A stretch of DNA of 44,904 nt from Octopus bimaculoides (taxonomy: Eukaryota), in assembly GCF_001194135.2 (NCBI RefSeq), contig NC_068996.1, positions 27,979,864 to 28,024,767 of the forward strand, written 5' to 3'. Below are positions 16,051-44,904 of the stretch, piece after piece (the stretch's first letter is position 1; every line of letters starts with the position of its first letter). The notes under the pieces are model-generated. The model made no database searches. It was not told the DNA's origin and was given only the letters and a program-made list of their open reading frames with translations. Made by a program: the position numbers and the translations under genes.

Positions 16051-16961
16051 TTAGCTGTCTTTGTCCTTTTGGTAAGCGTCGTACCAGATCTCTGACAGAC
16101 ATATCACTGAGTGGAAGCGTATGAAAATGAGAAGTGGAAGACACAGGTGAATAATTATATTCCAAGCCAGCAGACCATAGAAATTTTCGTGTAGAGGAAT
16201 CACCATGGTTTTCTTCACCTCAAAGCTGCTGACTGCCCAAAGTGCCAAGTTGCAGACCAACAGGAAGGTTACAACGGCCCGTCCAGGTTTTCGCGTTTGC
16301 TGTTCTTCGTACTTGATACTGCGACAGAGACCGTCCAACAGGAAGACAGCCTGCAAGCTAAGCTGCACAAGTTCCATGCTGATACAGATGAGTGATAGGA
16401 TAGCCACGACGCCGAACTCCTCCAGTCCGGTAGCAGAAGATATGAGGACTAAGAACAAGTAGACGTAAGCGCCGGACAATGCAATGATAAGCAAGATAGA
16501 ATCGAGAGAGATCATATGGCTTCCTCTGAACTTGAGTGCCGACAAACGAAGGTAGCCGAGCACAACTCCAACAGATGTAATCAGCAGCAGAGCAATTTCA
16601 GTAATGAAAAACACTTTAATGGCCGTTACAGAATCTGAGATACGAACTTCAAAGACGAAGAATGTTGCAATTGCTATCAGTGTTATGACACCGATCAAGA
16701 GACCGAGGAAAAGGCCGCGGTTAGCTTTCTCACAATCCATGGAAGCAGTGCTCTGTGGCTGAGAACTTGTCAGAGACATATGGCTTGGCCACTTTTGCTT
16801 GACTTTTACACCAACGTAAAGGTACATTCGATGGATAATACCCGACGCTATCAGGCTATACATTATGGTACAGGGAAACAAGTAAGGAGAAGCAACTCTT
16901 GCGAGCGTGACGTCCTCAAAACAACTCTTGGTTGCGTTGATCAGCGGTTTAACAGTGGCAG
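16051..16961 (-). CDS. otop: Otopetrin proton-channel family gene, terminal exon (TM6-TM12, stop TAA at 16051-16053)
   Basis: Acceptor ttttttgcag|CT at 16961 (phase 1). Encodes 'SPYLFPCTIMYSLIA', 'CEKANRGLFLG', 'VQLSLQAVFLLD', 'KPGRAVVTFLLVCNLALW..SFE', 'FYG...W.II...LPLLIFIRFHS..CLSEIW', which are otopetrin C-domain hallmarks. 302 aa after the split codon. Confidence 0.95.
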
Positions 16962-19799: not shown

Positions 19800-19965
19800 C
19801 TGATGCCTGTTGCTGTTGTTGGTGTGCAACACTCTTGAAATAGGTCTGCTGCTTGTAGTCTTTCGCAGTTTCTGCTATGGCTGTAGAAGACCAAACGCAA
19901 AGATTTGTTGCCAGAAGATGCATCAGGCCAAAACGAACCAAAGCTTTGCTTTTATTAATCACCAA
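19800..19965 (-). CDS. otop: Otopetrin exon (TM5), 166 nt, phase 0 to 1
   Basis: ttttgttatag|TTG...TCA G|gtgaga. Encodes 'LVINKSKALVRFGLMHLLATNLCVWSSTAIAE...QQQQQAS' (RFGLMH.xATN.CVW motif). G+CT joins the terminal exon in frame. Confidence 0.93.
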
Positions 19966-20680: not shown

Positions 20681-23600
20681 AATACCACCTACAAGATCCT
20701 CACATCCATACTAACTGAAAGAATATACGCTTTCCTGGAACAGAACTTTATCCTTCCACAAGCTCAAAAAGGTTGTAAAAGGAATTCTTATAGATGCAAA
20801 GATCAATAACTCATAAATAAAACGATTGTAGAGAATTGCTGGAGTAACAAGAACCTGAGAATGGCATGGATAGACTACAGGAAAGCATTTGATAGTGTCC
20901 CACATAATTGACTCCTCAAAGCCCTTGAAATATATAAGATCTCTCCAGTCATTTACAAATTCTTACAAAGTAGCATGCTCAAATGGAACACACGTCTCCT
21001 TCTGAACCATAGTAATAGGATGAGCCAATCTAACAACATCAACATCAAATGAGGGATCTTTCAAGGTGACTCCCTCTCTCCATTACACTTTTGCATGACA
21101 ACCTACTCTCAAACGAACTGAGTAACATCAGGTATGGGTTCAAAATGTATATTATAGTAAATCATCTGTTTTATATGGACGATCTGAAGCTATTTGCTAG
21201 AAATGATGAAGAGCTAAAGAGTTCAACAATGGCATCGGGATGGATTTTGGCCTTGACAAGTGTGCTAAAGGAACTTTTGTAAGAAGACATCTCAAGCAAA
21301 CAACTTCCATTAAATTAAGTACCGACACTACCATCAAGGAGCTTGACCAACAAGGAAGCTATAAATACCTGTGGATAAACGAAGGGGACGGTATACAACA
21401 TACTACTATGAAGGAAAAAATACGAAAGGAATATTACAGAAGAATACGACTCGTACTAAAAACTGAACTCGACTCTGAAAATCGTATCGAAGTCAAATAC
21501 ATTTTTAATATTAATTGGAATCTTACAGAACTCCAACGCCTGGACAGGAAGACAAGAAAACTACTAACATCTAAGAACATGCACCACCCAAAAGCAGACG
21601 TTGATTGTCTGTGCCTACCTAGAAGTAATGGGGGAAGACCTCCACAACAGGAATGAACAAGTATTTATCTAGAAAAGAGGACTGGATGCTGCAGCTTGTG
21701 TGCAAACACGAAAGCATAAAAAAATCACATTCTATTGTCAAGGAAGCTTGCAAATTCGCAAGGAAACTCGGAATTAGATGAAGAACCTGAAACCACTGTC
21801 ACGCAAAAAGCAAAACGGATCAAGCAGACTGCAAAAAAGAACGGGCAGAAACAAATTGAGGAGTGGTGGAGCCAGAAACCTCTGCAGGGACAGTATATAC
21901 TTTGAAACTGAAATGCTGATGTAGACCAATCTCAAGATTGAAAGCAGAGACTGAAGGTTTCATATTGGCGGCACAAGATCAAAACTTACTTACCAAAAAC
22001 TACCAGGCTGACGTTCTTTAAAACGATTCTGACTCTAAATCCAGATTCTGCGATAAATTTGATGAAACAATAGCCCATCTCGGCTCGGGATGTCCTGTGC
22101 TGACACCAAACGAATCCAAAAGTCGCCATGATAGGGTAGGACATTGGAAAATATGTAAACACTTCAAAATCAGGATATCCAACGAGTTTGTCTAAAACAA
22201 TTCGTCTAAAATACAATTGATCTAAATGCAATTCATCTAAAACAATTTGTCTAAAACAGTATTAACCCTGAAACAATTTAACTAAAAATAAAAATTGTTT
22301 CTTTTTTTTATGAATTCGTAGGAAGTGGAAAGGAATAGTTGTTTACTCATGCTATGGAGTAGAAATAGTTGTTTGCGATAATGTGGAATAAATCTAGAAA
22401 AAAAAAAACTAGTTGTTTTCTAAAAAACAAAAATTCTTATTTGGAATTATTCACAGTGAAAAGACCCATATCCAAAGATGCCTACTGAATTTACTGAATC
22501 AGAAAACGATCATTGATTGATAATGGACATACATACTACAAGAATGGTGAAAATGGCGAACGTGATTATTGGAGGTGCGAAAAATATCCGAAAACAAAAT
22601 GCCGTGCTCGCATAATTACTGTAAAGGATGAAATTGTAAAATTTTCCAACGACCATAATCATATATTGGATGCCGTTGAAATTACAGCGAAAGAAGCTAT
22701 TTAAAAAAATACATCAACTGGCTAAGTCAACACGAGATTCAGTTGTATCTAGTGTTTTCGATGATGGCGATCAAGCTGTTGCCTCAAAACTAACAAAAAT
22801 GCAAAATATTAAGAGAACAATAAGATATATAAGGCAACAAACCCTTACTGGACCGGCCCTACCATCAACTTGCCGTGAAATAGTTTTCCCATCTGAACTT
22901 ACGAAATCTTTTAAAGATAAGATGATCAATATCTGCTTTATAACTCAGGACCTGTTGAAAAGCGTATTGTGATATTTGCGATAAGGCGTAACTTTTAGTG
23001 TTTATCACTAAGCAGTCACTGGTATGCAGACGGCACATTTAAAACAGTCCCTTTATTATTTCACCAGTTATATACCTTACATGGATTAAAAGAGGCCCAC
23101 CTCTCAACTACCAAATATGTGGAATATGTATTTAAGAGTTCTTGATTTGCCCAGAACAAATAACTCTGTCGAAGGGTGGCATCGAGCATTCAAAACCCAA
23201 GTTGGGTCTCATCACCCCAACATCTGGAAATTTGTCAACTTTTTACAAAGAGAGCGAAGTCTAAGCAAGATTCGGATTGAGCAGTATATTGCTGGAATGG
23301 ATCCAGAATCTCCAAAGAAGCGCTGTCGAGATACTGCAAAATGAATAAAAAATCTTGTTCAAAATTTTGATCCACAAAATATTATTGATTACGTTCGTGG
23401 TATAACACACAACCTTTCCTTTTAAGTAAATGCTATCTTTTGTTTTTTATGCATTTCGAATTAAAATAATCCTAATGTTTTTATAAATAGTTAACAACTA
23501 GTTATAAACCCAAAGAATTATAAATTATGAATAAAAAATACGAATTCATCAGAAATAAACAATTTTACTTTTTAGTCAGATTGTGTTTTAGACAAATTGC

Positions 23601-30885: not shown

Positions 30886-31046
30886 CTTGTGGTTTTTGAA
30901 CACGAAGAAGGTTTGCACAAAAACGAATAGCAAGTGCATAACGTAAACAAGAGGGAATATCGGGCTCTCACAGGTGGCGGTTGCCTCTGTCTCAAAGTAA
31001 GTTGCAATATGGAAACCATCTAGGGCGACACTTCCAAGACTGAATG
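30886..31046 (-). CDS. otop: Otopetrin exon (TM3-TM4), 161 nt, phase 1 to 0
   Basis: ttcttttgcag|CA TTC...CAC AAG|gtaaga. Encodes '(A)FSLGSVALDGFHIATYFE...C...VYVMHLLFVFVQTFFVFKNHK'. Phases match both neighbouring exons. Confidence 0.93.
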
Positions 31047-38690: not shown

Positions 38691-39030
38691 CGAGACATCC
38701 AAGTCGTAGATAAAAGTTGATGCCTTCACCAACATGGGCTGCAGTTCCTTCGGTCGGCAATTCCAGGTGGCTTTGTGATGTAGTCTGTGAGGAGGTAGAC
38801 ATCTCATCAGGACTGCAACTCTTGTTAGTGATGTGATCAGACAGAACCTGTTCCTCATTGTCCTCGCTGATTGGTTCAGTCTGGTTGCATTTGTGAAGGT
38901 TATCCTGGCTTCTTCGAATGGTAATGCGAAGATTCTTTTCGAAGTAAGTATTCTTCATACCGCGCAGTAGATGAACGTGGAAGTAGAGCAGTATAATCAA
39001 CGACATGATGTATAAATAAACCAAGAATAC
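38691..39030 (-). CDS. otop: Otopetrin exon (TM2, long intracellular loop, start of TM3), 340 nt, phase 0 to 1
   Basis: catttccatag|GTA TTC TTG...TGT CTC G|gtaaac. Encodes 'VFLVYLYIMSLIILLYFHVHLL...EGINFYLRLGCL' (YLY..S and FYLRLG motifs). G+CA gives Ala in frame with the 31046 exon. Confidence 0.92.
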
Positions 39031-39283
39031 CTATGGAAATGAGGAAAGATAAATTTGGAAAAGAATAAAATGGAAAAATTCAAGAAAATGAACAGAAGAG
39101 AAATAAAAATAAAAATATAGATATAAAAATGTAACAAAATAGTTAAAACAAAAATTGCAACCTTTTTGTCTTTAAATGATGATGATGAGGATGATGAGGA
39201 TGATGATAATAATTTGTTTGTGGTGAGTGGACTAGTCAATTACATCGACTCCAGTGTTTCACTGGTACTGCCAGCTCACCGCC

Positions 39284-39344
<61 letters not shown>

Positions 39345-39345
<1 letters not shown>

Positions 39346-39625
39346 GTTCTGGAAATAGAGGTAACTCGAATGTAGAGTCTAAAAACAAATAATTCCTATC
39401 ATTAGGTATGATAAAAATATTTAAACAAATTCATAACAAAAACACCAGGACTTACAAGTATATATATATAATATACAGAAAATAGCACTACTAAGCACTG
39501 CACACATCCTACGTAAAACACTTTCAATGCAATGAAAGTAAGAGGATCACAAGAAACCACAGCACATACCCAAGGCACAGAGAGCTGCGCTCGGTAGTGC
39601 AGTGAAAGCACGTGATAAAAAAATC
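39345..39625 (+). mobile_element. Very short 3' fragment of an R4/Dong-like element inserted at an (AAT)n tract
   Basis: 'KVLEIEVTRM...KTPGLTS..NIQKIALLSTAHILRKTLSMQ*' followed by a 3' UTR. An (AAT)~19 tract lies directly upstream, and a SINE family 2 body starts directly downstream. Confidence 0.8.
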
Positions 39626-40552
39626 CTTTCTACTATAGGCACAAAGCCTGAAATTTGAGGGGAGGGGACTAGTCAATTACATCAACCCCAGTGTTTCACT
39701 TTGTCAGGAGTTAATCTCCCTGAGGCCAAGATACTATAGGAGCTCTTTATCAGGGCTAAACAAACGATAACATTTCCCCCTCCATATGCTCTTTCTTCCC
39801 GCCACTTATTCTCATTCTAATACACTTTCTCATTCCTCACTCTTGTTTTTTTACAAATATTTTCTTTCGCCCCCTCTCTATCACACGCGCACCCCCATCC
39901 CCCCACACGCAGTTCCTAAAAGACCAATTTTACTCTTTCATTCCATTTTCTACTTTGCTGTCGTCACTCTTTCTTACCACAAGCCAACTTCCGTTTCCGC
40001 TTCCGCCTCTGTTCCTTATTGAACAAATTTGTACTGTGAGTTTACGCATCTAATTAAACAAAACTATGAACATTTTCTTGCTGTTTTTTCTCCGAATACG
40101 AGACATTTACTTTATACAGTTGCTGTATACATACCAAACTGTTAACAAACACCTGGTATATAACCTGATACAGACAGTTGTCTATTTCTGTAAATTAACC
40201 GCCTTGATAATTCCCATGCGAATTTTTCTTGGCTTAATTACAATTTGTCGCGCATTTAAAAAATATTTATTTAACTCTTAATTATGAAGTTGTTTCATAC
40301 ACATACACGCACACACTAAAAAAATGGCAATCTTATCTTACATGCACCATCGCTATGGAGATGGTACCAGGTTAATATCCTGAAAGAAACTATAGCGAGC
40401 ACCATAAACATAGAGGAGGGTAGGGTGGAATGGGCTTTCCCAAACAGGTTACAACCATTAATTTCACAGACTTGCTGTGTCTTCTCTGCGTTTTTTCTGC
40501 TGCAGCTGTTACAACAACAACAACAACTGCTACTGGTGCTGCCGCCGCCGCC

Positions 40553-41085
40553 GGGTGAAATTTTACAACCTCTTCAGATTAAACGTCTGTCCACTCAATG
40601 AATTCTGAAGTGACCGAAACAGGTGGAAATTTGGAGGCGCAAGATCTGGAGAATATGGAAAGTGCACCAAAGCTTCCCAGCCAAGCTTCAATAACTTCTA
40701 CTGCGTCTGCATAGAAGTTCGCGGTCTGGTATTTTCGTGATCAATGACAATACCCTTACGATTAAAAAGTACTGAACGTTTCAAATTATTTAATTTATCC
40801 AGTTGATCACAGTAATGATCCGATTTATGGTTCTGTCTATTGGAAGAAGCTCGTAAAAGACAATACTCTTCCATTATCAACAAATTAAAAATATAACCAC
40901 TTCTTCGGTTGAAGTCCTTGCTTTGGAGATTGTTTGTGGTGGTGCGCCGCGCTCGAGCCATTTTTGTTTGCGTTTCACATTGTTATAGACGACCTGTTTT
41001 TCGTACCCTGTCACCATTCTCTTAAAAAAAAAAAAAAAATTTTTTAAATCGCTTTCTTCACGTTTCTGCAACGAATCGCAGTTGT
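40553..41085 (-). mobile_element. mariner transposase catalytic-domain remnant
   Basis: 'KRMVTGYEKQVVYNN' (decayed TGDE), 'HYCDQLDKL', 'RKGIVIDHENTRP' (HDNARP-like), '[27 protein letters not shown]' (YSPDLAPSD-like). Confidence 0.88.
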
Positions 41086-41164
41086 GAAACCGTTAGCTGA
41101 AGTTAGCCTCATCAATTGATGTGTGACCCAAACATGAAACTTGCGGAGGTGACGCAGGTTGATG

Positions 41165-41215
41165 AACCCAGAACCATGTGGTTGGGAAGCAAGATTCTTA
41201 CCACACAGACACTCA
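41165..41215 (-). mobile_element. SINE family 1 head fragment
   Basis: Reverse complement of GTGTGGTAAGAA.CTTGCTTCCCAACCACATGGTTC. Confidence 0.65.
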
Positions 41216-41791
41216 TATATATNNNNNNNNNNNNNNNNNNNNNNNNNNNNNNNNNNNNNNNNNNNNNNNNNNNNNNNNNNNNNNNNNNNNNNNNNNNNNN
41301 NNNNNNNNNNNNNNNNNNNNNNNNNNNNNNNNNNNNNNNNNNNNNNNNNNNNNNNNNNNNNNNNNNNNNNNNNNNNNNNNNNNNNNNNNNNNNNNNNNNN
41401 NNNNNNNNNNNNNNNNNNNNNNNNNNNNNNNNNNNNNNNNNNNNNNNNNNNNNNNNNNNNNNNNNNNNNNNNNNNNNNNNNNNNNNNNNNNNNNNNNNNN
41501 NNNNNNNNNNNNNNNNNNNNNNNNNNNNNNNNNNNNNNNNNNNNNNNNNNNNNNNNNNNNNNNNNNNNNNNNNNNNNNNNNNNNNNNNNNNNNNNNNNNN
41601 NNNNNNNNNNNNNNNNNNNNNNNNNNNNNNNNNNNNNNNNNNNATATATATATATATATATATAATTATGTAAATAAAAATAAAGGATAAAATCGTTAAT
41701 GATTTTAACAGTGACCAGTATATAATATAAACCTATTCAGGTGAATTCATATATAGAGATTTATAATAATATAAAATACAATTATCATTAA

Positions 41792-42226
41792 GAGCATGCT
41801 GAAAATAGACGCTAAATCGTCAAACCACTGAAGATTATCACCTTTATTATACACAACGTGTTGAAATCGAGGGAGTAGGCTCACAGAATTCATAAAATAG
41901 ATAGCCTTGGATTGATCAATTTCTGGATTAGTCCAATAATTTTTCCTCATCAACAAGGCATACTTAGGAAAATAAATGAGATATTTATACATACCCACAG
42001 GTATGTCGGTATGTATATCTCATTTATTTCCTTAAGTGTGTCTTACTGATGACAAAAAGTTATTGGACTAATCCAGAAATTGATCAATCCGAGGCTATCT
42101 ATTTTATGAATTTCTGTGAGCTTACTCCCTCGATTTCAGCACGTTGTGTACTATAAAGGTGATAATCCTAAGTGGTTTGACGATTTAGCGTCTACTTTCA
42201 GCATAGACATGGTTTCTTCTATGCCC
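41792..42226. mobile_element. Foldback MITE, 435 bp, ~200-bp imperfect TIRs, TTAA flanks (Kolobok-like)
   Basis: TTAA|GAGCAT...ATGCCC|TTAA. The arm 41796-~41997 is the reverse complement of ~42010-42204, for example CTGGATTAGTCCAATAA versus TTATTGGACTAATCCAG. The left arm carries an ~18-nt deletion. Confidence 0.8.
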
Positions 42227-42535
42227 TTAATCATAATGTATTTTACACTATTATAAATCGATCTCTCTCACCCTTTCTCTTCTCTCTCCTCTCTCTCTCT
42301 CTCTCTCNNNNNNNNNNNNNNNNNNNNNNNNNNNNNNNNNNNNNNNNNNNNNNNNNNNNNNNNNNNNNNNNNNNNNNNNNNNNNNNNNNNNNNNNNNNNN
42401 NNNNNNNNNNNNNNNNNNNNNNNNNNNNNNNNNNNNNNNNNNNNNNNNNNNNNNNNNNNNNNNNNNNNNNNNNNATATATATATATATTTATATATACAT
42501 ACACACGTACGTATGTTTGTATGCATGTATGTATG

Positions 42536-42566
<31 letters not shown>

Positions 42567-43615
42567 GAAGTTCTGTATATAAACCTAGAGAAACAAATTA
42601 GAAAAATTGTTCAATGGACTGTTAAGGCTTTATAATGTTTGAACGTGAGGAATGGATGAAGACACAGAGAGGTGTTAAATGGTCTAAATAGCTGGGAACA
42701 AGATTTCTTAAATTCTTGAAAGTTATCAGTTGTAGACGGAAAAATCGCAGCAACAAACAGAAAAACAACTTTAAGCTGATAGTGTCAGCTTCAAAGGGGA
42801 AAACAGTGTTATCTTCACATATATAAGAATATACATGCGTGCATGTTTGAACGTACGTATGTATGTATGTATGTATGTATGTATGTATGTATGTATGTAT
42901 GTATGTATGTATGTATGTATGTATGTATGTTACACAGTTTCGTACCGGGCAATAACATCTATTTTGCATAGGGACACATTTTTCCCAAAGAGGTCATAGG
43001 GGTATGAGATTTTTTTTTCTGATAATTTCTATGATTCAAGCGAGGTCGCTGCTGCTGATAGTTCGAAAGTAAAAACTGCTTCGTTAAATAAATAAATACA
43101 TAAATAAATAAATAAATAAATAAATAAGAGTTTTCAGGGTCGACAGTGGAATAGTGTGTGCGGTGTGCTGACTGATGTAGCAGAATAGATAAAGAGGTTT
43201 CTAGAACAAAGTCTAAGATGCAGACGCTTTGAAGAAGAGCGAGCAAGCGAGTGAGAGACAGACAAATAGATATAGATATAGATAGATAGACAGAGAGAGA
43301 GGGAGAGGGAGAGAGAGAGAGAATGAGAGAGTGAGAGAGAGAAAGAGAGGGATGGGGAAGAGAGAAGCCTTGGTCGGAATGTTACAGCCAATAGCTTCTT
43401 CTCACCGCAAAATAACATATGTCTCTTCTGTTTTCATTCCCGTCTGTGATTCTTTGCCAACACAAATCATCACTGCCTTACCAATTTGTGGTAACAACTA
43501 TCTTTGTATTCTAACTCTGATCTTTCTTTTCGTCCTGCGTGCGCGAGCGCGTGTGAGTATGTATTTGTACATATAGTTGTGTAAATATGTGTTTGTTTGG
43601 GAGTGTGTATGTGTG

Positions 43616-43665
<50 letters not shown>

Positions 43666-43755
43666 TGAGGGTCTTATAANNNNNNNNNNNNNNNNNNNNN
43701 NNNNNNNNNNNNNNNNNNNNNNNNNNNNNNNNNNNNNNNNNNNNNNNNNNNNNNN

Positions 43756-43799
<44 letters not shown>

Positions 43800-44181
43800 T
43801 GAGGGTCTTATAAAAACCATACATTGCTAGAAATAAGAGCTAAACGCTCTAATGTTGCAGTCTTCTTGATAGGCACTCGGTAACTTGCGGGAACTTGTTT
43901 TGCCTGATGGTCATCTAGCATTCCGATTGGCTAGTTCTCTTTAGAAGTCATTATTTGTTTTGTCTCCCTGAGATCCGGTTTTGACCAGAGGAAAATTTCC
44001 TTGATTTTGACTGAGATAACGCCAGCAAATGGTGCTTCAGAAGGTATATGGTGTTATTGTATAGTAATTTGGAGTTGAAGTTACGAATCCTTGAGGAAGC
44101 CTGTTACTTAAAGTTTTCGAATTATATCAGTTGTGTCTGATATGTTTTCGTGGAAAATTTTTTTTTCTTTCTAGTCTGTTA

Positions 44182-44830
44182 TCATAAGATATTTAGTTGC
44201 AGTTTGTATTTTTTAATGAGCATGCTTTCTTTATTCAATCGGAATTGGGTTGAAGTGTTTCCAGTGCATTGGTAGGAAGGGAAAAATCTGGTATTTAGGA
44301 TTTATGTTTGTGGGGTATTGATCTGTTTGCTCACGGGAATTTTCCTGGTCGTGGGGTCCCGGATCTATTGCCTGTGTGCCGTCAGTCTATCCCTCAAAGT
44401 CAAGTTAGGTTGACCTATGTAGTTCTCATCACACCTACCACTAATGAGAACATAAATTAAGTTTTACGATGTACAGCTGAAGTGATCTTTTATGATGAAT
44501 ATTTGACCTGACTTGAATTCATATATTGAACCTTCCATTAGGCTGATGCAGGTCCAGTTAGGGCGGTTGCATTTTTTAACTAGTGGAGTTGTATTTTTGG
44601 TGGGCAATTTGGTGCTGGTAAGTAACCTTTTTAGGGATTTGAGTTTTCTTTTACTGTTAAATTTTTTGTGTTTCGAGTGTTTTTTCAGGAGGGTATATTT
44701 TGATGGATAATGTCGTATGATTCCATGTTCCTTGGATTGCGTGTTGATACGTAAGACAAAGTTTTAAGCGTGTCTTGTTTTGCGTAATTTTTGGATGTCT
44801 ATCGTTTTTTCACCTTTTCTTCCATTTTTT
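44182..44830 (-). mobile_element. Penelope-like element, C-terminal GIY-YIG endonuclease remnant
   Basis: 'LSYVSTRNPRN', 'KKCNRPN..C', 'FSCTS*NLIYVLISGRCDENYIGQ..LTLRDRLTAHRQ', 'RLNKESMLIKKYKLQLN'. In-frame stops are present. Confidence 0.8.
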
Positions 44831-44904
44831 TAATTAAACTAACCGGATATTTTCTATCATCGTTTCCATCGCAGTCCCAGACAAACACACACACACAGCA
44901 CATA

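What the first reader, a model, noticed from the sequence alone, without database searches (positions are those of the whole stretch)
16858..16866. Otopetrin TM6 lacks the conserved glutamate: 'FPCTIMYSL' instead of 'P..IEYSL'
The codon is ATG (plus-strand 'cat', 16861-16863) where otopetrins normally have Glu. From memory of the vertebrate Otop1/Otop3 structures, this Glu (about zebrafish E267) pairs with the TM12 His at the N/C-domain interface, one proposed proton path. The His (16111-16113) and the adjacent Tyr are retained. Glu to Met needs at least 2 nucleotide changes, and A-to-I editing of ATG can only give Val, so editing cannot restore it. The ORF and splice sites are intact, so this may be a functionally diverged channel with altered gating, selectivity or ligand.
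Basis: partly seen in the sequence, partly recalled or inferred. Interest (0 to 1): 0.7.

Follow-up and report, generated by a model that had tools for sequence, protein, structure and literature searches.

The report
Molluscan otopetrin lacking the proton-relay glutamate
The octopus otopetrin gene in this window really has methionine where studied otopetrin proton channels need a glutamate, but this is an ancient trait of a whole molluscan gene lineage and not an octopus oddity, so these proteins probably do not move protons in the textbook way.

Summary
On the minus strand, 16866-16858 reads ATA ATG TAT (I-M-Y) inside 'FPCTIMYSL'. The Met (16863-16861) aligns with the TM6 glutamate of solved otopetrins (zebrafish OTOP1 E267, CeOTOP8 E325, mouse OTOP2). 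The window is Octopus bimaculoides and the gene is the annotated XP_014784578.1.

The substitution is not private to octopus. Every member of a well-supported pan-molluscan orthogroup (about 35 named bivalve, gastropod and cephalopod species; NJ bootstrap 192/200) has Ile, Met or Leu here and never Glu. All cephalopods have Met.

The gene is intact, transcribed in another cephalopod, and under strong purifying selection (pN 0.076, pS saturated). Cephalopods also replace the C-pore 'FYR' tyrosine with Ile.

Published mutagenesis shows neutralising this Glu abolishes current. The Glu/His proton relay therefore cannot operate here. Whether the protein conducts protons by another route is untested.

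Verdict: a new variant of a known kind, of moderate interest.

The parts
38691..39030 (-). Coding exon (second coding exon of XP_014784578.1; TM2 plus a long disordered loop up to 'GINFYLRLGCL')
   Evidence: tblastn with mollusc orthologs. Acceptor AG and donor GT found. Translation identical to P0217.
30886..31046 (-). Coding exon (TM3-TM4, 'AFSLGSVALDGFH...VQTFFVFKNHK'; carries the N-domain triad Gln)
19800..19965 (-). Coding exon (TM5, 'LVINKSKALVRFGLMHLLATNLCVW...'; carries the N-domain triad Asn)
16051..16961 (-). Last coding exon including the stop codon (TM6-TM12). Pfam Otopetrin PF03189, E = 2e-69.
16861..16863 (-). ATG = Met at the position of the TM6 interfacial proton-carrier Glu (zebrafish OTOP1 E267, XtOTOP3 E321, CeOTOP8 E325)
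   Evidence: It lies in a predicted helix with pLDDT of 90 or more.
16858..16860 (-). TAT = Tyr, equivalent to zebrafish Y268 (N-domain Gln-Asn-Tyr triad); retained
16501..16503 (-). GAT = TM9 Asp (CeOTOP8 D439 / XtOTOP3 D509 equivalent, salt-bridge partner of the His); retained
16351..16353 (-). CAG = Gln of the C-domain triad (zebrafish Q433 equivalent); retained
16249..16251 (-). AAC = Asn of the C-domain triad (zebrafish N528 equivalent); retained
16120..16122 (-). ATA = Ile where otopetrins have the Tyr/Phe of the 'FYR' motif (zebrafish Y571, C-domain triad). 'FIR' is fixed in cephalopods.
16111..16113 (-). CAC = TM12 His (zebrafish H574 / CeOTOP8 H567 equivalent); retained

Best explanation
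The window holds exons 2-5 of the Octopus bimaculoides gene for XP_014784578.1 / XP_052829438.1 ('otopetrin-2-like' / 'proton channel OtopLc'). It is the cephalopod ortholog of an ancient pan-molluscan otopetrin orthogroup. In that orthogroup the buried TM6 glutamate, which in studied otopetrins picks up the proton and hands it to the TM12 histidine, was replaced by a hydrophobic residue. That residue is Ile in most bivalves and gastropods, Met in cephalopods and abalone, and Leu in one sequence. The replacement predates the split of these classes. Shown here: the substitution, its clade-wide fixation, the intact transcribed gene, strong purifying selection, and retention of the otopetrin fold, the His, the TM9 Asp and most triad residues. 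Inferred: the Glu-to-His inter-barrel proton relay cannot operate without a titratable side chain at this site. A hydrophobic residue should instead seal and stabilise the already hydrophobic N/C-barrel interface. The protein is therefore most likely not a canonical acid-activated otopetrin proton channel. It keeps some selected function, either a different conduction route and gating or a non-conducting, modulatory role. In cephalopods the C-pore triad Tyr is also lost (FYR to FIR), so two of the three proposed proton routes are altered.
For: Identity and homology: Pfam Otopetrin E = 2e-69 and 5e-97. The product is 100% identical to XP_014784578.1. The AF2 model has pLDDT 83 and pTM 0.81, and all 12 significant Foldseek PDB hits are OTOP structures.
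Column homology.
Clade-wide hydrophobic residue.
Monophyly: NJ tree and 192/200 bootstraps with the focal column excluded. About 25 further clade-signature columns were found.
Cephalopod fixation: both O. bimaculoides annotations, O. vulgaris, Argonauta hians, Sepia pharaonis and Logan transcript contigs all read 'FPCTIMYSLI' and 'IFIRFHS'.
Expression and selection: an uninterrupted 954-aa ORF lies on a 3.3-kb Logan contig. Against it pN = 0.076 and pS = 0.82, which is saturated.
Functional weight of the site: XtOTOP3 E321D is tolerated and E321Q abolishes current (PMC6483595). [quoted passage not shown] The Glu/His-bridged relay model comes from the CeOTOP8 and mOTOP2 structures, which call the pair 'absolutely conserved' (PMC11343839).
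Against: No electrophysiology exists for any member of this orthogroup, so loss of proton conduction is inference only. Saotome et al. (10.1101/542308) propose two further possible proton paths through the N and C barrels. The N-domain Gln-Asn-Tyr triad is intact here. The conserved His and TM9 Asp suggest that part of the intracellular proton-handling apparatus is still used. Gln at this column recurs in at least 12 lineages, so naturally 'neutralised' otopetrins may be functional in ways the XtOTOP3 point mutant does not predict. The clade has Asp on TM3 ('ALDGFH') where most protostome otopetrins have Ser. I could not evaluate whether this compensates, and vertebrate OTOP1 and OTOP2 also have Asp there.
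Confidence: 0.6

Rival explanations
1. The protein is still a proton channel. In this orthogroup protons pass through the N-barrel and/or C-barrel pores or along a water wire, so the TM6 Glu is dispensable. The substitution changes only gating, desensitisation or pH dependence.
For: Three candidate pathways are discussed in the literature and remain unresolved. The N-domain Gln/Asn/Tyr triad, the C-domain Gln/Asn, the His and the TM9 Asp are retained. Strong purifying selection is seen. Non-acidic residues recur widely in protostome otopetrins.
Against: E-to-Q abolishes current in XtOTOP3, and E267 mutants of zebrafish OTOP1 lose function despite normal trafficking. The CeOTOP8 and mOTOP2 structures place the Glu directly on the path. 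In cephalopods the C-pore triad Tyr is also gone.
Confidence: 0.3
2. The protein is a non-conducting regulatory or partner subunit. It may dimerise with a conducting paralog or act as a pH- or lipid-sensing scaffold, as 'dead' members do in other channel families.
For: The hydrophobic replacement should stabilise the inter-barrel interface (inference, which notes the buried Glu is expected to be destabilising). The fold and dimer-forming helices are conserved. Several otopetrin paralogs coexist in molluscs.
Against: Otopetrin heterodimers are not established in the papers read. The only other octopus paralog found (P0053) has Gln at the same site, so a conducting partner was not identified.
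Confidence: 0.15
3. This is an octopus-specific (or cephalopod-specific) neofunctionalisation created by a recent Glu-to-Met change.
For: Met rather than Ile is found in all cephalopods, and 'FIR' is cephalopod-specific.
Against: No member of the orthogroup in bivalves or gastropods has Glu. Haliotis also has Met. Met is one nucleotide from Ile. The Glu loss predates the class-level divergence.
Confidence: 0.02
4. The Met is a sequencing or assembly error, or the gene is a decaying pseudogene.
For: The window comes from a gappy draft assembly with 12 N-runs totalling 4356 N.
Against: The same residue appears in two O. bimaculoides annotations, O. vulgaris, Argonauta, Sepia and many transcript contigs. 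The ORF and splice sites are intact. pN is far below pS.
Confidence: 0.01

Closest known systems
CeOTOP8 (C. elegans otopetrin 8; PDB 8ug4/8ug5)
   Same: It is the best sequence match (E = 4e-40) and the best structural match (Foldseek E = 1.7e-14). Shared features are the double-barrel fold, the TM12 His, the TM9 Asp and the 'P..I.YSLI' TM6 motif.
   Different: CeOTOP8 has Glu325, which forms the proton-transferring bridge with His567. The octopus protein has Met there and Ile for the FYR Tyr.
Vertebrate OTOP1/2/3 (zebrafish OTOP1 6nf4, chicken OTOP3 6nf6, Xenopus OTOP3 6o84, mouse OTOP2 8ug6)
   Same: Same Pfam family and fold. The N-domain Gln-Asn-Tyr triad, the C-domain Gln and Asn, and His574 are conserved.
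   Different: About 20% identity. E267/E321 is replaced by Met and Y571 by Ile. R540 is Lys.
Pan-molluscan orthologs annotated 'proton channel OtopLc-like' or 'otopetrin-2-like' (e.g. Crassostrea gigas XP_011418765.2, Aplysia californica P0204, Haliotis rubra P0212, Pecten maximus XP_033743719.1)
   Same: 54-65% identity, the same exon-encoded domains, a hydrophobic residue at the Glu column, and about 25 shared signature substitutions.
   Different: Most have Ile rather than Met, and Phe or Tyr rather than Ile in the FYR motif.
Second cephalopod otopetrin paralog (O. bimaculoides 'OtopLc isoform X4', P0053; Sepia pharaonis cluster P0335)
   Same: An otopetrin (Pfam E = 1.9e-137) that also lacks the Glu.
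   Different: About 36% identical. It has Gln, not a hydrophobic residue, and 'FFR'. It belongs to a different lophotrochozoan group in which E, Q, L, M, V and I all occur.

Membership tests
Otopetrin family (Pfam PF03189) | Significant match to the Otopetrin domain profile above the gathering score | tested here: met
   235 bits for the last exon and 326 bits for the full protein, against a cutoff of 27.8.
Otopetrin family (Pfam PF03189) | Twelve-TM fold with two homologous six-helix barrels | tested here: met
   The AF2 model of exons 2-5 (TM2-TM12) has pLDDT 83 and pTM 0.81. All 12 Foldseek hits with E <= 0.001 are OTOP structures, with target-normalised TM-score 0.61-0.73. TM1 is encoded by exon 1, which lies outside the window but is present in XP_014784578.1.
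Canonical otopetrin proton channel (Glu/His relay, as in OTOP1-3 and CeOTOP8) | Acidic residue (Glu, with Asp tolerated) on TM6 buried at the N/C-barrel interface | tested here: not met
   Met at 16863-16861 aligns with E267/E325. The whole orthogroup has I, M or L.
Canonical otopetrin proton channel (Glu/His relay, as in OTOP1-3 and CeOTOP8) | TM12 His (zebrafish H574) and its TM9 Asp partner | tested here: met
   His at 16113-16111 and Asp at 16503-16501. Both are conserved across the clade.
Canonical otopetrin proton channel (Glu/His relay, as in OTOP1-3 and CeOTOP8) | N-domain Gln-Asn-Tyr constriction triad | tested here: met
   'VQTFF' Gln, 'ATNLCVW' Asn and 'MYSL' Tyr align with Q174, N204 and Y268.
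Canonical otopetrin proton channel (Glu/His relay, as in OTOP1-3 and CeOTOP8) | C-domain Gln-Asn-Tyr constriction triad (Tyr from the FYR motif) | tested here: not met
   Gln and Asn are present. The Tyr position is Ile (16122-16120). Among 147 relatives the column is Y 96, F 42, H 7, one gap, and Ile only in the window sequence. All cephalopod orthologs read 'FIR'.
Canonical otopetrin proton channel (Glu/His relay, as in OTOP1-3 and CeOTOP8) | Proton-selective, Zn2+-sensitive current evoked by extracellular acid | not testable with these tools
   This needs heterologous expression and patch clamp.
Pan-molluscan hydrophobic-TM6 otopetrin orthogroup (defined here) | Monophyly with the mollusc orthologs, 54% or more identity, and shared signature columns (e.g. 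DGL-C-R for DGL-R-R, GS-V-x-L-D-G for GS-M-x-Y-S-G) | tested here: met
   NJ tree, bootstrap 192/200 with the focal column removed, signature columns.

The most novel reading that the evidence does not exclude
A conserved pan-molluscan class of otopetrins, which must predate the divergence of bivalves, gastropods and cephalopods, has abandoned the Glu/His proton relay altogether and performs a different job. The many Gln or hydrophobic variants in other protostome otopetrins would be similar cases. Possible jobs are a channel with a different conduction path or ligand, a sterol- or lipid-interacting protein at the sealed interface, or a modulatory subunit. Cephalopods, whose two identified paralogs carry Met and Gln, may lack a canonical otopetrin proton channel entirely.
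Probability: 0.3. Interest if true: 0.7.

Novelty: new variant of a known kind. Interest (0 to 1): 0.45.

Why it matters
Structural papers call this glutamate 'absolutely conserved' and build the current proton-conduction model on it. This survey shows that about one in five of the nearest invertebrate otopetrins lack it. One of these is an old, strongly constrained molluscan orthogroup expressed in oysters and cephalopods.

These natural variants are ready-made tests of which of the three proposed pathways carries protons, and of whether otopetrins have non-channel roles. They also warn against transferring 'proton channel OtopLc' annotations to molluscan genes, for example in studies of acid sensing, statolith or shell mineralisation and ocean acidification.

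Tried and rejected
- Exact look-up of the 358-aa ORF spanning the last exon in public assemblies found nothing on record.
- Exon 1 was sought by tblastn with ortholog N-termini and with residues 1-200 of XP_014784578.1. It is not in the window; it is upstream or in an N gap.
- tblastn of the last exon against the window found no tandem otopetrin paralog.
- A compensating acidic residue was sought in the interface helices. None is specific to TM6, TM11 or TM12. The TM3 Asp is clade-typical but is also present in vertebrate OTOPs, so this is inconclusive.
- dS between octopus and the other cephalopod is saturated, so only a bound on dN/dS can be given.
- The ORF at 21240-21656 has no Pfam match.
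- Literature searches for otopetrins in cephalopods or molluscs, or for natural loss of this Glu, found nothing relevant.
- A Glu-bearing cephalopod paralog was not found, but the searches were capped and are not exhaustive.

Full report
**Observation.** On the minus strand the bases 16866..16858 read ATA ATG TAT (Ile-Met-Tyr) inside '...ARVASPYLFPCTIMYSLIASGIIH...'. The surrounding 908-nt exon (16961-16054, stop at 16053-16051) matches Pfam Otopetrin at E = 2e-69. HMMER alignments to solved structures place the Met opposite the Glu of CeOTOP8 ('CIVEYSLIGA'), mouse OTOP2 ('PFNIEYSLF') and zebrafish OTOP1 ('PFNIEYHIF'). Counting along the zebrafish chain confirms that this is E267, followed by Y268. 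The flanks are almost invariant across the family, so the column is not in doubt.

**Gene and organism.** tblastn with mollusc homologs finds three more coding exons on the minus strand: 39030-38691, 31046-30886 and 19965-19800. All have AG/GT boundaries and compatible phases. Their joined translation (525 aa) is 100% identical to residues 194-718 of XP_014784578.1, 'otopetrin-2-like [Octopus bimaculoides]'. A newer annotation of the same gene is XP_052829438.1, 'proton channel OtopLc'. Exon 1 (N-terminus and TM1) is not in the window. An AlphaFold2 model built on a 50-sequence alignment has pLDDT 83 and pTM 0.81. It places the Met in a long helix (residues 242-270 of the model) with pLDDT above 90. 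All 12 significant Foldseek hits in the PDB are otopetrin structures.

**The substitution is not private to octopus.**
- The closest homologs found first (61-65% identity: Pinctada, Lottia, Littorina and others) all read 'FPCTIIYSI'.
- A full HMMER scan of 1.84 billion representative proteins gave 1329 hits. Of the best 150 plus the earlier hits, 149 cover the column: E 115, Q 20, I 10, L 1, M 1, V 1, D 1.
- In an NJ tree the window protein falls in one tight clade in which every member is hydrophobic at this site.
- With the focal column removed, the clade is recovered in 192 of 200 bootstraps.
- A profile search with the clade alignment, plus cluster look-ups, gave species names.
  - Bivalves have Ile: Pinctada, Ostrea, three Crassostrea species, Solemya, Potamilus, Dreissena, Mytilus and four scallop species.
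  - Gastropods have Ile: Lottia, Patella, Littorina, Batillaria, Pomacea, Nucella, Gigantopelta, Aplysia, two Elysia species, Plakobranchus, Biomphalaria, Physella, Lymnaea and Candidula.
  - Haliotis asinina and H. rubra have Met. One unnamed sequence has Leu.
  - Cephalopods have Met: both O. bimaculoides annotations, O. vulgaris, Argonauta hians, Sepia pharaonis and about ten transcript contigs.
- No member has Glu or Asp. The Glu was therefore lost before these classes diverged, and Met is one nucleotide away from the clade's usual Ile.
- The clade also carries about 25 private substitutions at otherwise conserved columns.

**How common is loss of the Glu?** Across all 352 fetched otopetrins that cover the column the counts are E 252, I 42, Q 29, M 21, L 5, V 2, D 1. 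After 90% de-duplication (282 sequences) they are E 223, Q 26, I 21, M 5, L 5, V 1, D 1, which is 21% non-acidic. The sample is biased towards relatives of mollusc queries. Gln appears in at least a dozen separate lineages. In a second lophotrochozoan otopetrin group the column is variable:
- E in most members;
- Q in Octopus bimaculoides (P0053), Sepia (P0335 cluster), Potamilus, Lingula, Tubulanus, Pomacea and Patella;
- L in Mactra and Mercenaria;
- M in Dreissena and Lineus;
- V in Owenia.

Both cephalopod paralog groups that I could identify lack the Glu. I could not make the paralog census exhaustive.

**The gene is real and constrained.** The Sepia-cluster ortholog P0221 lies on a 3265-nt Logan contig from run SRR8281666 as one uninterrupted 954-aa ORF, which indicates a spliced transcript. 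Against the window's coding sequence, pN is 0.076 and pS is 0.82 (saturated). The Met codon is ATG in both. This excludes an assembly error or a pseudogene, and it shows strong purifying selection.

**Other functional residues.** Mapping onto zebrafish OTOP1 and column counts give the following.
- Retained: N-domain triad Gln/Asn/Tyr, C-domain Gln and Asn, W532, the Arg of the FYR motif, His574, and the TM9 Asp that salt-bridges the His.
- R540 is Lys.
- The Tyr of the FYR motif (Y571, C-pore triad) is Ile (16122-16120). Among 147 relatives this column is otherwise only Y, F or H. All cephalopod orthologs read 'FIR', whereas bivalve and gastropod orthologs read FFR or FYR. This second change is specific to cephalopods.

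**Mechanism.**
- Published work shows that XtOTOP3 tolerates E321D but loses all current with E321Q (PMC6483595).
- Zebrafish E267 and H574 are needed for function but not for assembly or trafficking (PMC9348849).
- CeOTOP8 and mOTOP2 structures capture the Glu being exposed for protonation, buried, and then bridged to the His. They call the pair 'absolutely conserved' (PMC11343839).
- An Ile or Met cannot be protonated, so this relay cannot run in the molluscan orthogroup. That follows directly.
- It is inference that the protein lacks canonical acid-evoked proton current. The N-barrel and C-barrel routes proposed by Saotome et al. are not excluded, and the conserved His/Asp pair suggests that intracellular proton handling still matters.
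- I rate 'relay broken, non-canonical function' at about 0.6. I rate 'still a proton channel by another path' at about 0.3. A modulatory-subunit role is a sub-possibility.

**Comparison and novelty.** The gene is a member of the otopetrin family by sequence and fold, and it is already annotated. It fails one defining feature of the canonical channel mechanism (the TM6 acidic residue) and, in cephalopods, a second (the C-pore Tyr). Seven literature searches found no description of natural otopetrins lacking this Glu, and no work on cephalopod or molluscan otopetrins. I classify it as a new variant of a known kind. The interest lies in the conserved molluscan orthogroup and the recurrent loss across protostomes, because these offer natural tests of the disputed conduction pathway. 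The octopus residue on its own is less notable.

Noticed in passing
window 16120-16122 (minus strand): The Tyr/Phe of the conserved 'FYR' motif (C-pore Gln-Asn-Tyr triad, zebrafish Y571) is Ile. 'FIR' is shared by all cephalopod orthologs, and Ile was seen in none of the other 146 relatives (Y 96, F 42, H 7, one gap).
   Followed up: yes
outside the window: P0053 (O. bimaculoides 'OtopLc isoform X4') and the P0335 cluster (Sepia pharaonis): A second cephalopod otopetrin paralog has Gln at the same TM6 column. No Glu-bearing cephalopod otopetrin was found, so cephalopods may lack a canonical one. The census was not exhaustive.
   Followed up: partly
window 21240-21656 (+), inside the intron between the exons at 30886 and 19965: A 138-aa ORF ('MDFGLDKCAKGTF...YKYLWINEGDG...') resembles, from memory, the C-terminal part of a non-LTR retrotransposon ORF2. 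It has no Pfam match.
   Followed up: partly
window 39031-44904: Exon 1 of the gene (residues 1-193 of XP_014784578.1, including TM1) is not detectable in the window. It lies further upstream or in one of the N gaps (41223-41643, 42308-42474, 43680-43755).
   Followed up: yes
whole window: This is a draft-quality assembly with 12 runs of N totalling 4356 bases. Microsatellites and low-complexity repeats are dense ((TG)n, (ATAC)n, (TATC)n, (ATA)n and others) and generate many spurious repeat-encoded ORFs.
   Followed up: no
window 19800-19830 / 16950-16961 (exon 4/5 junction): A short poly-Gln run ('AHQQQQQASAAT') lies in the TM5-TM6 loop. This loop is variable in length and sequence among orthologs and is absent in most of them.
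   Followed up: no
window 30995-31010 (TM3, 'SVALDGFH'): The orthogroup has Asp and His on TM3 where most protostome otopetrins have Ser and Glu. Vertebrate OTOP1 and OTOP2 also have the Asp. It is a possible compensatory or co-evolving site at or near the N/C interface.
   Followed up: partly
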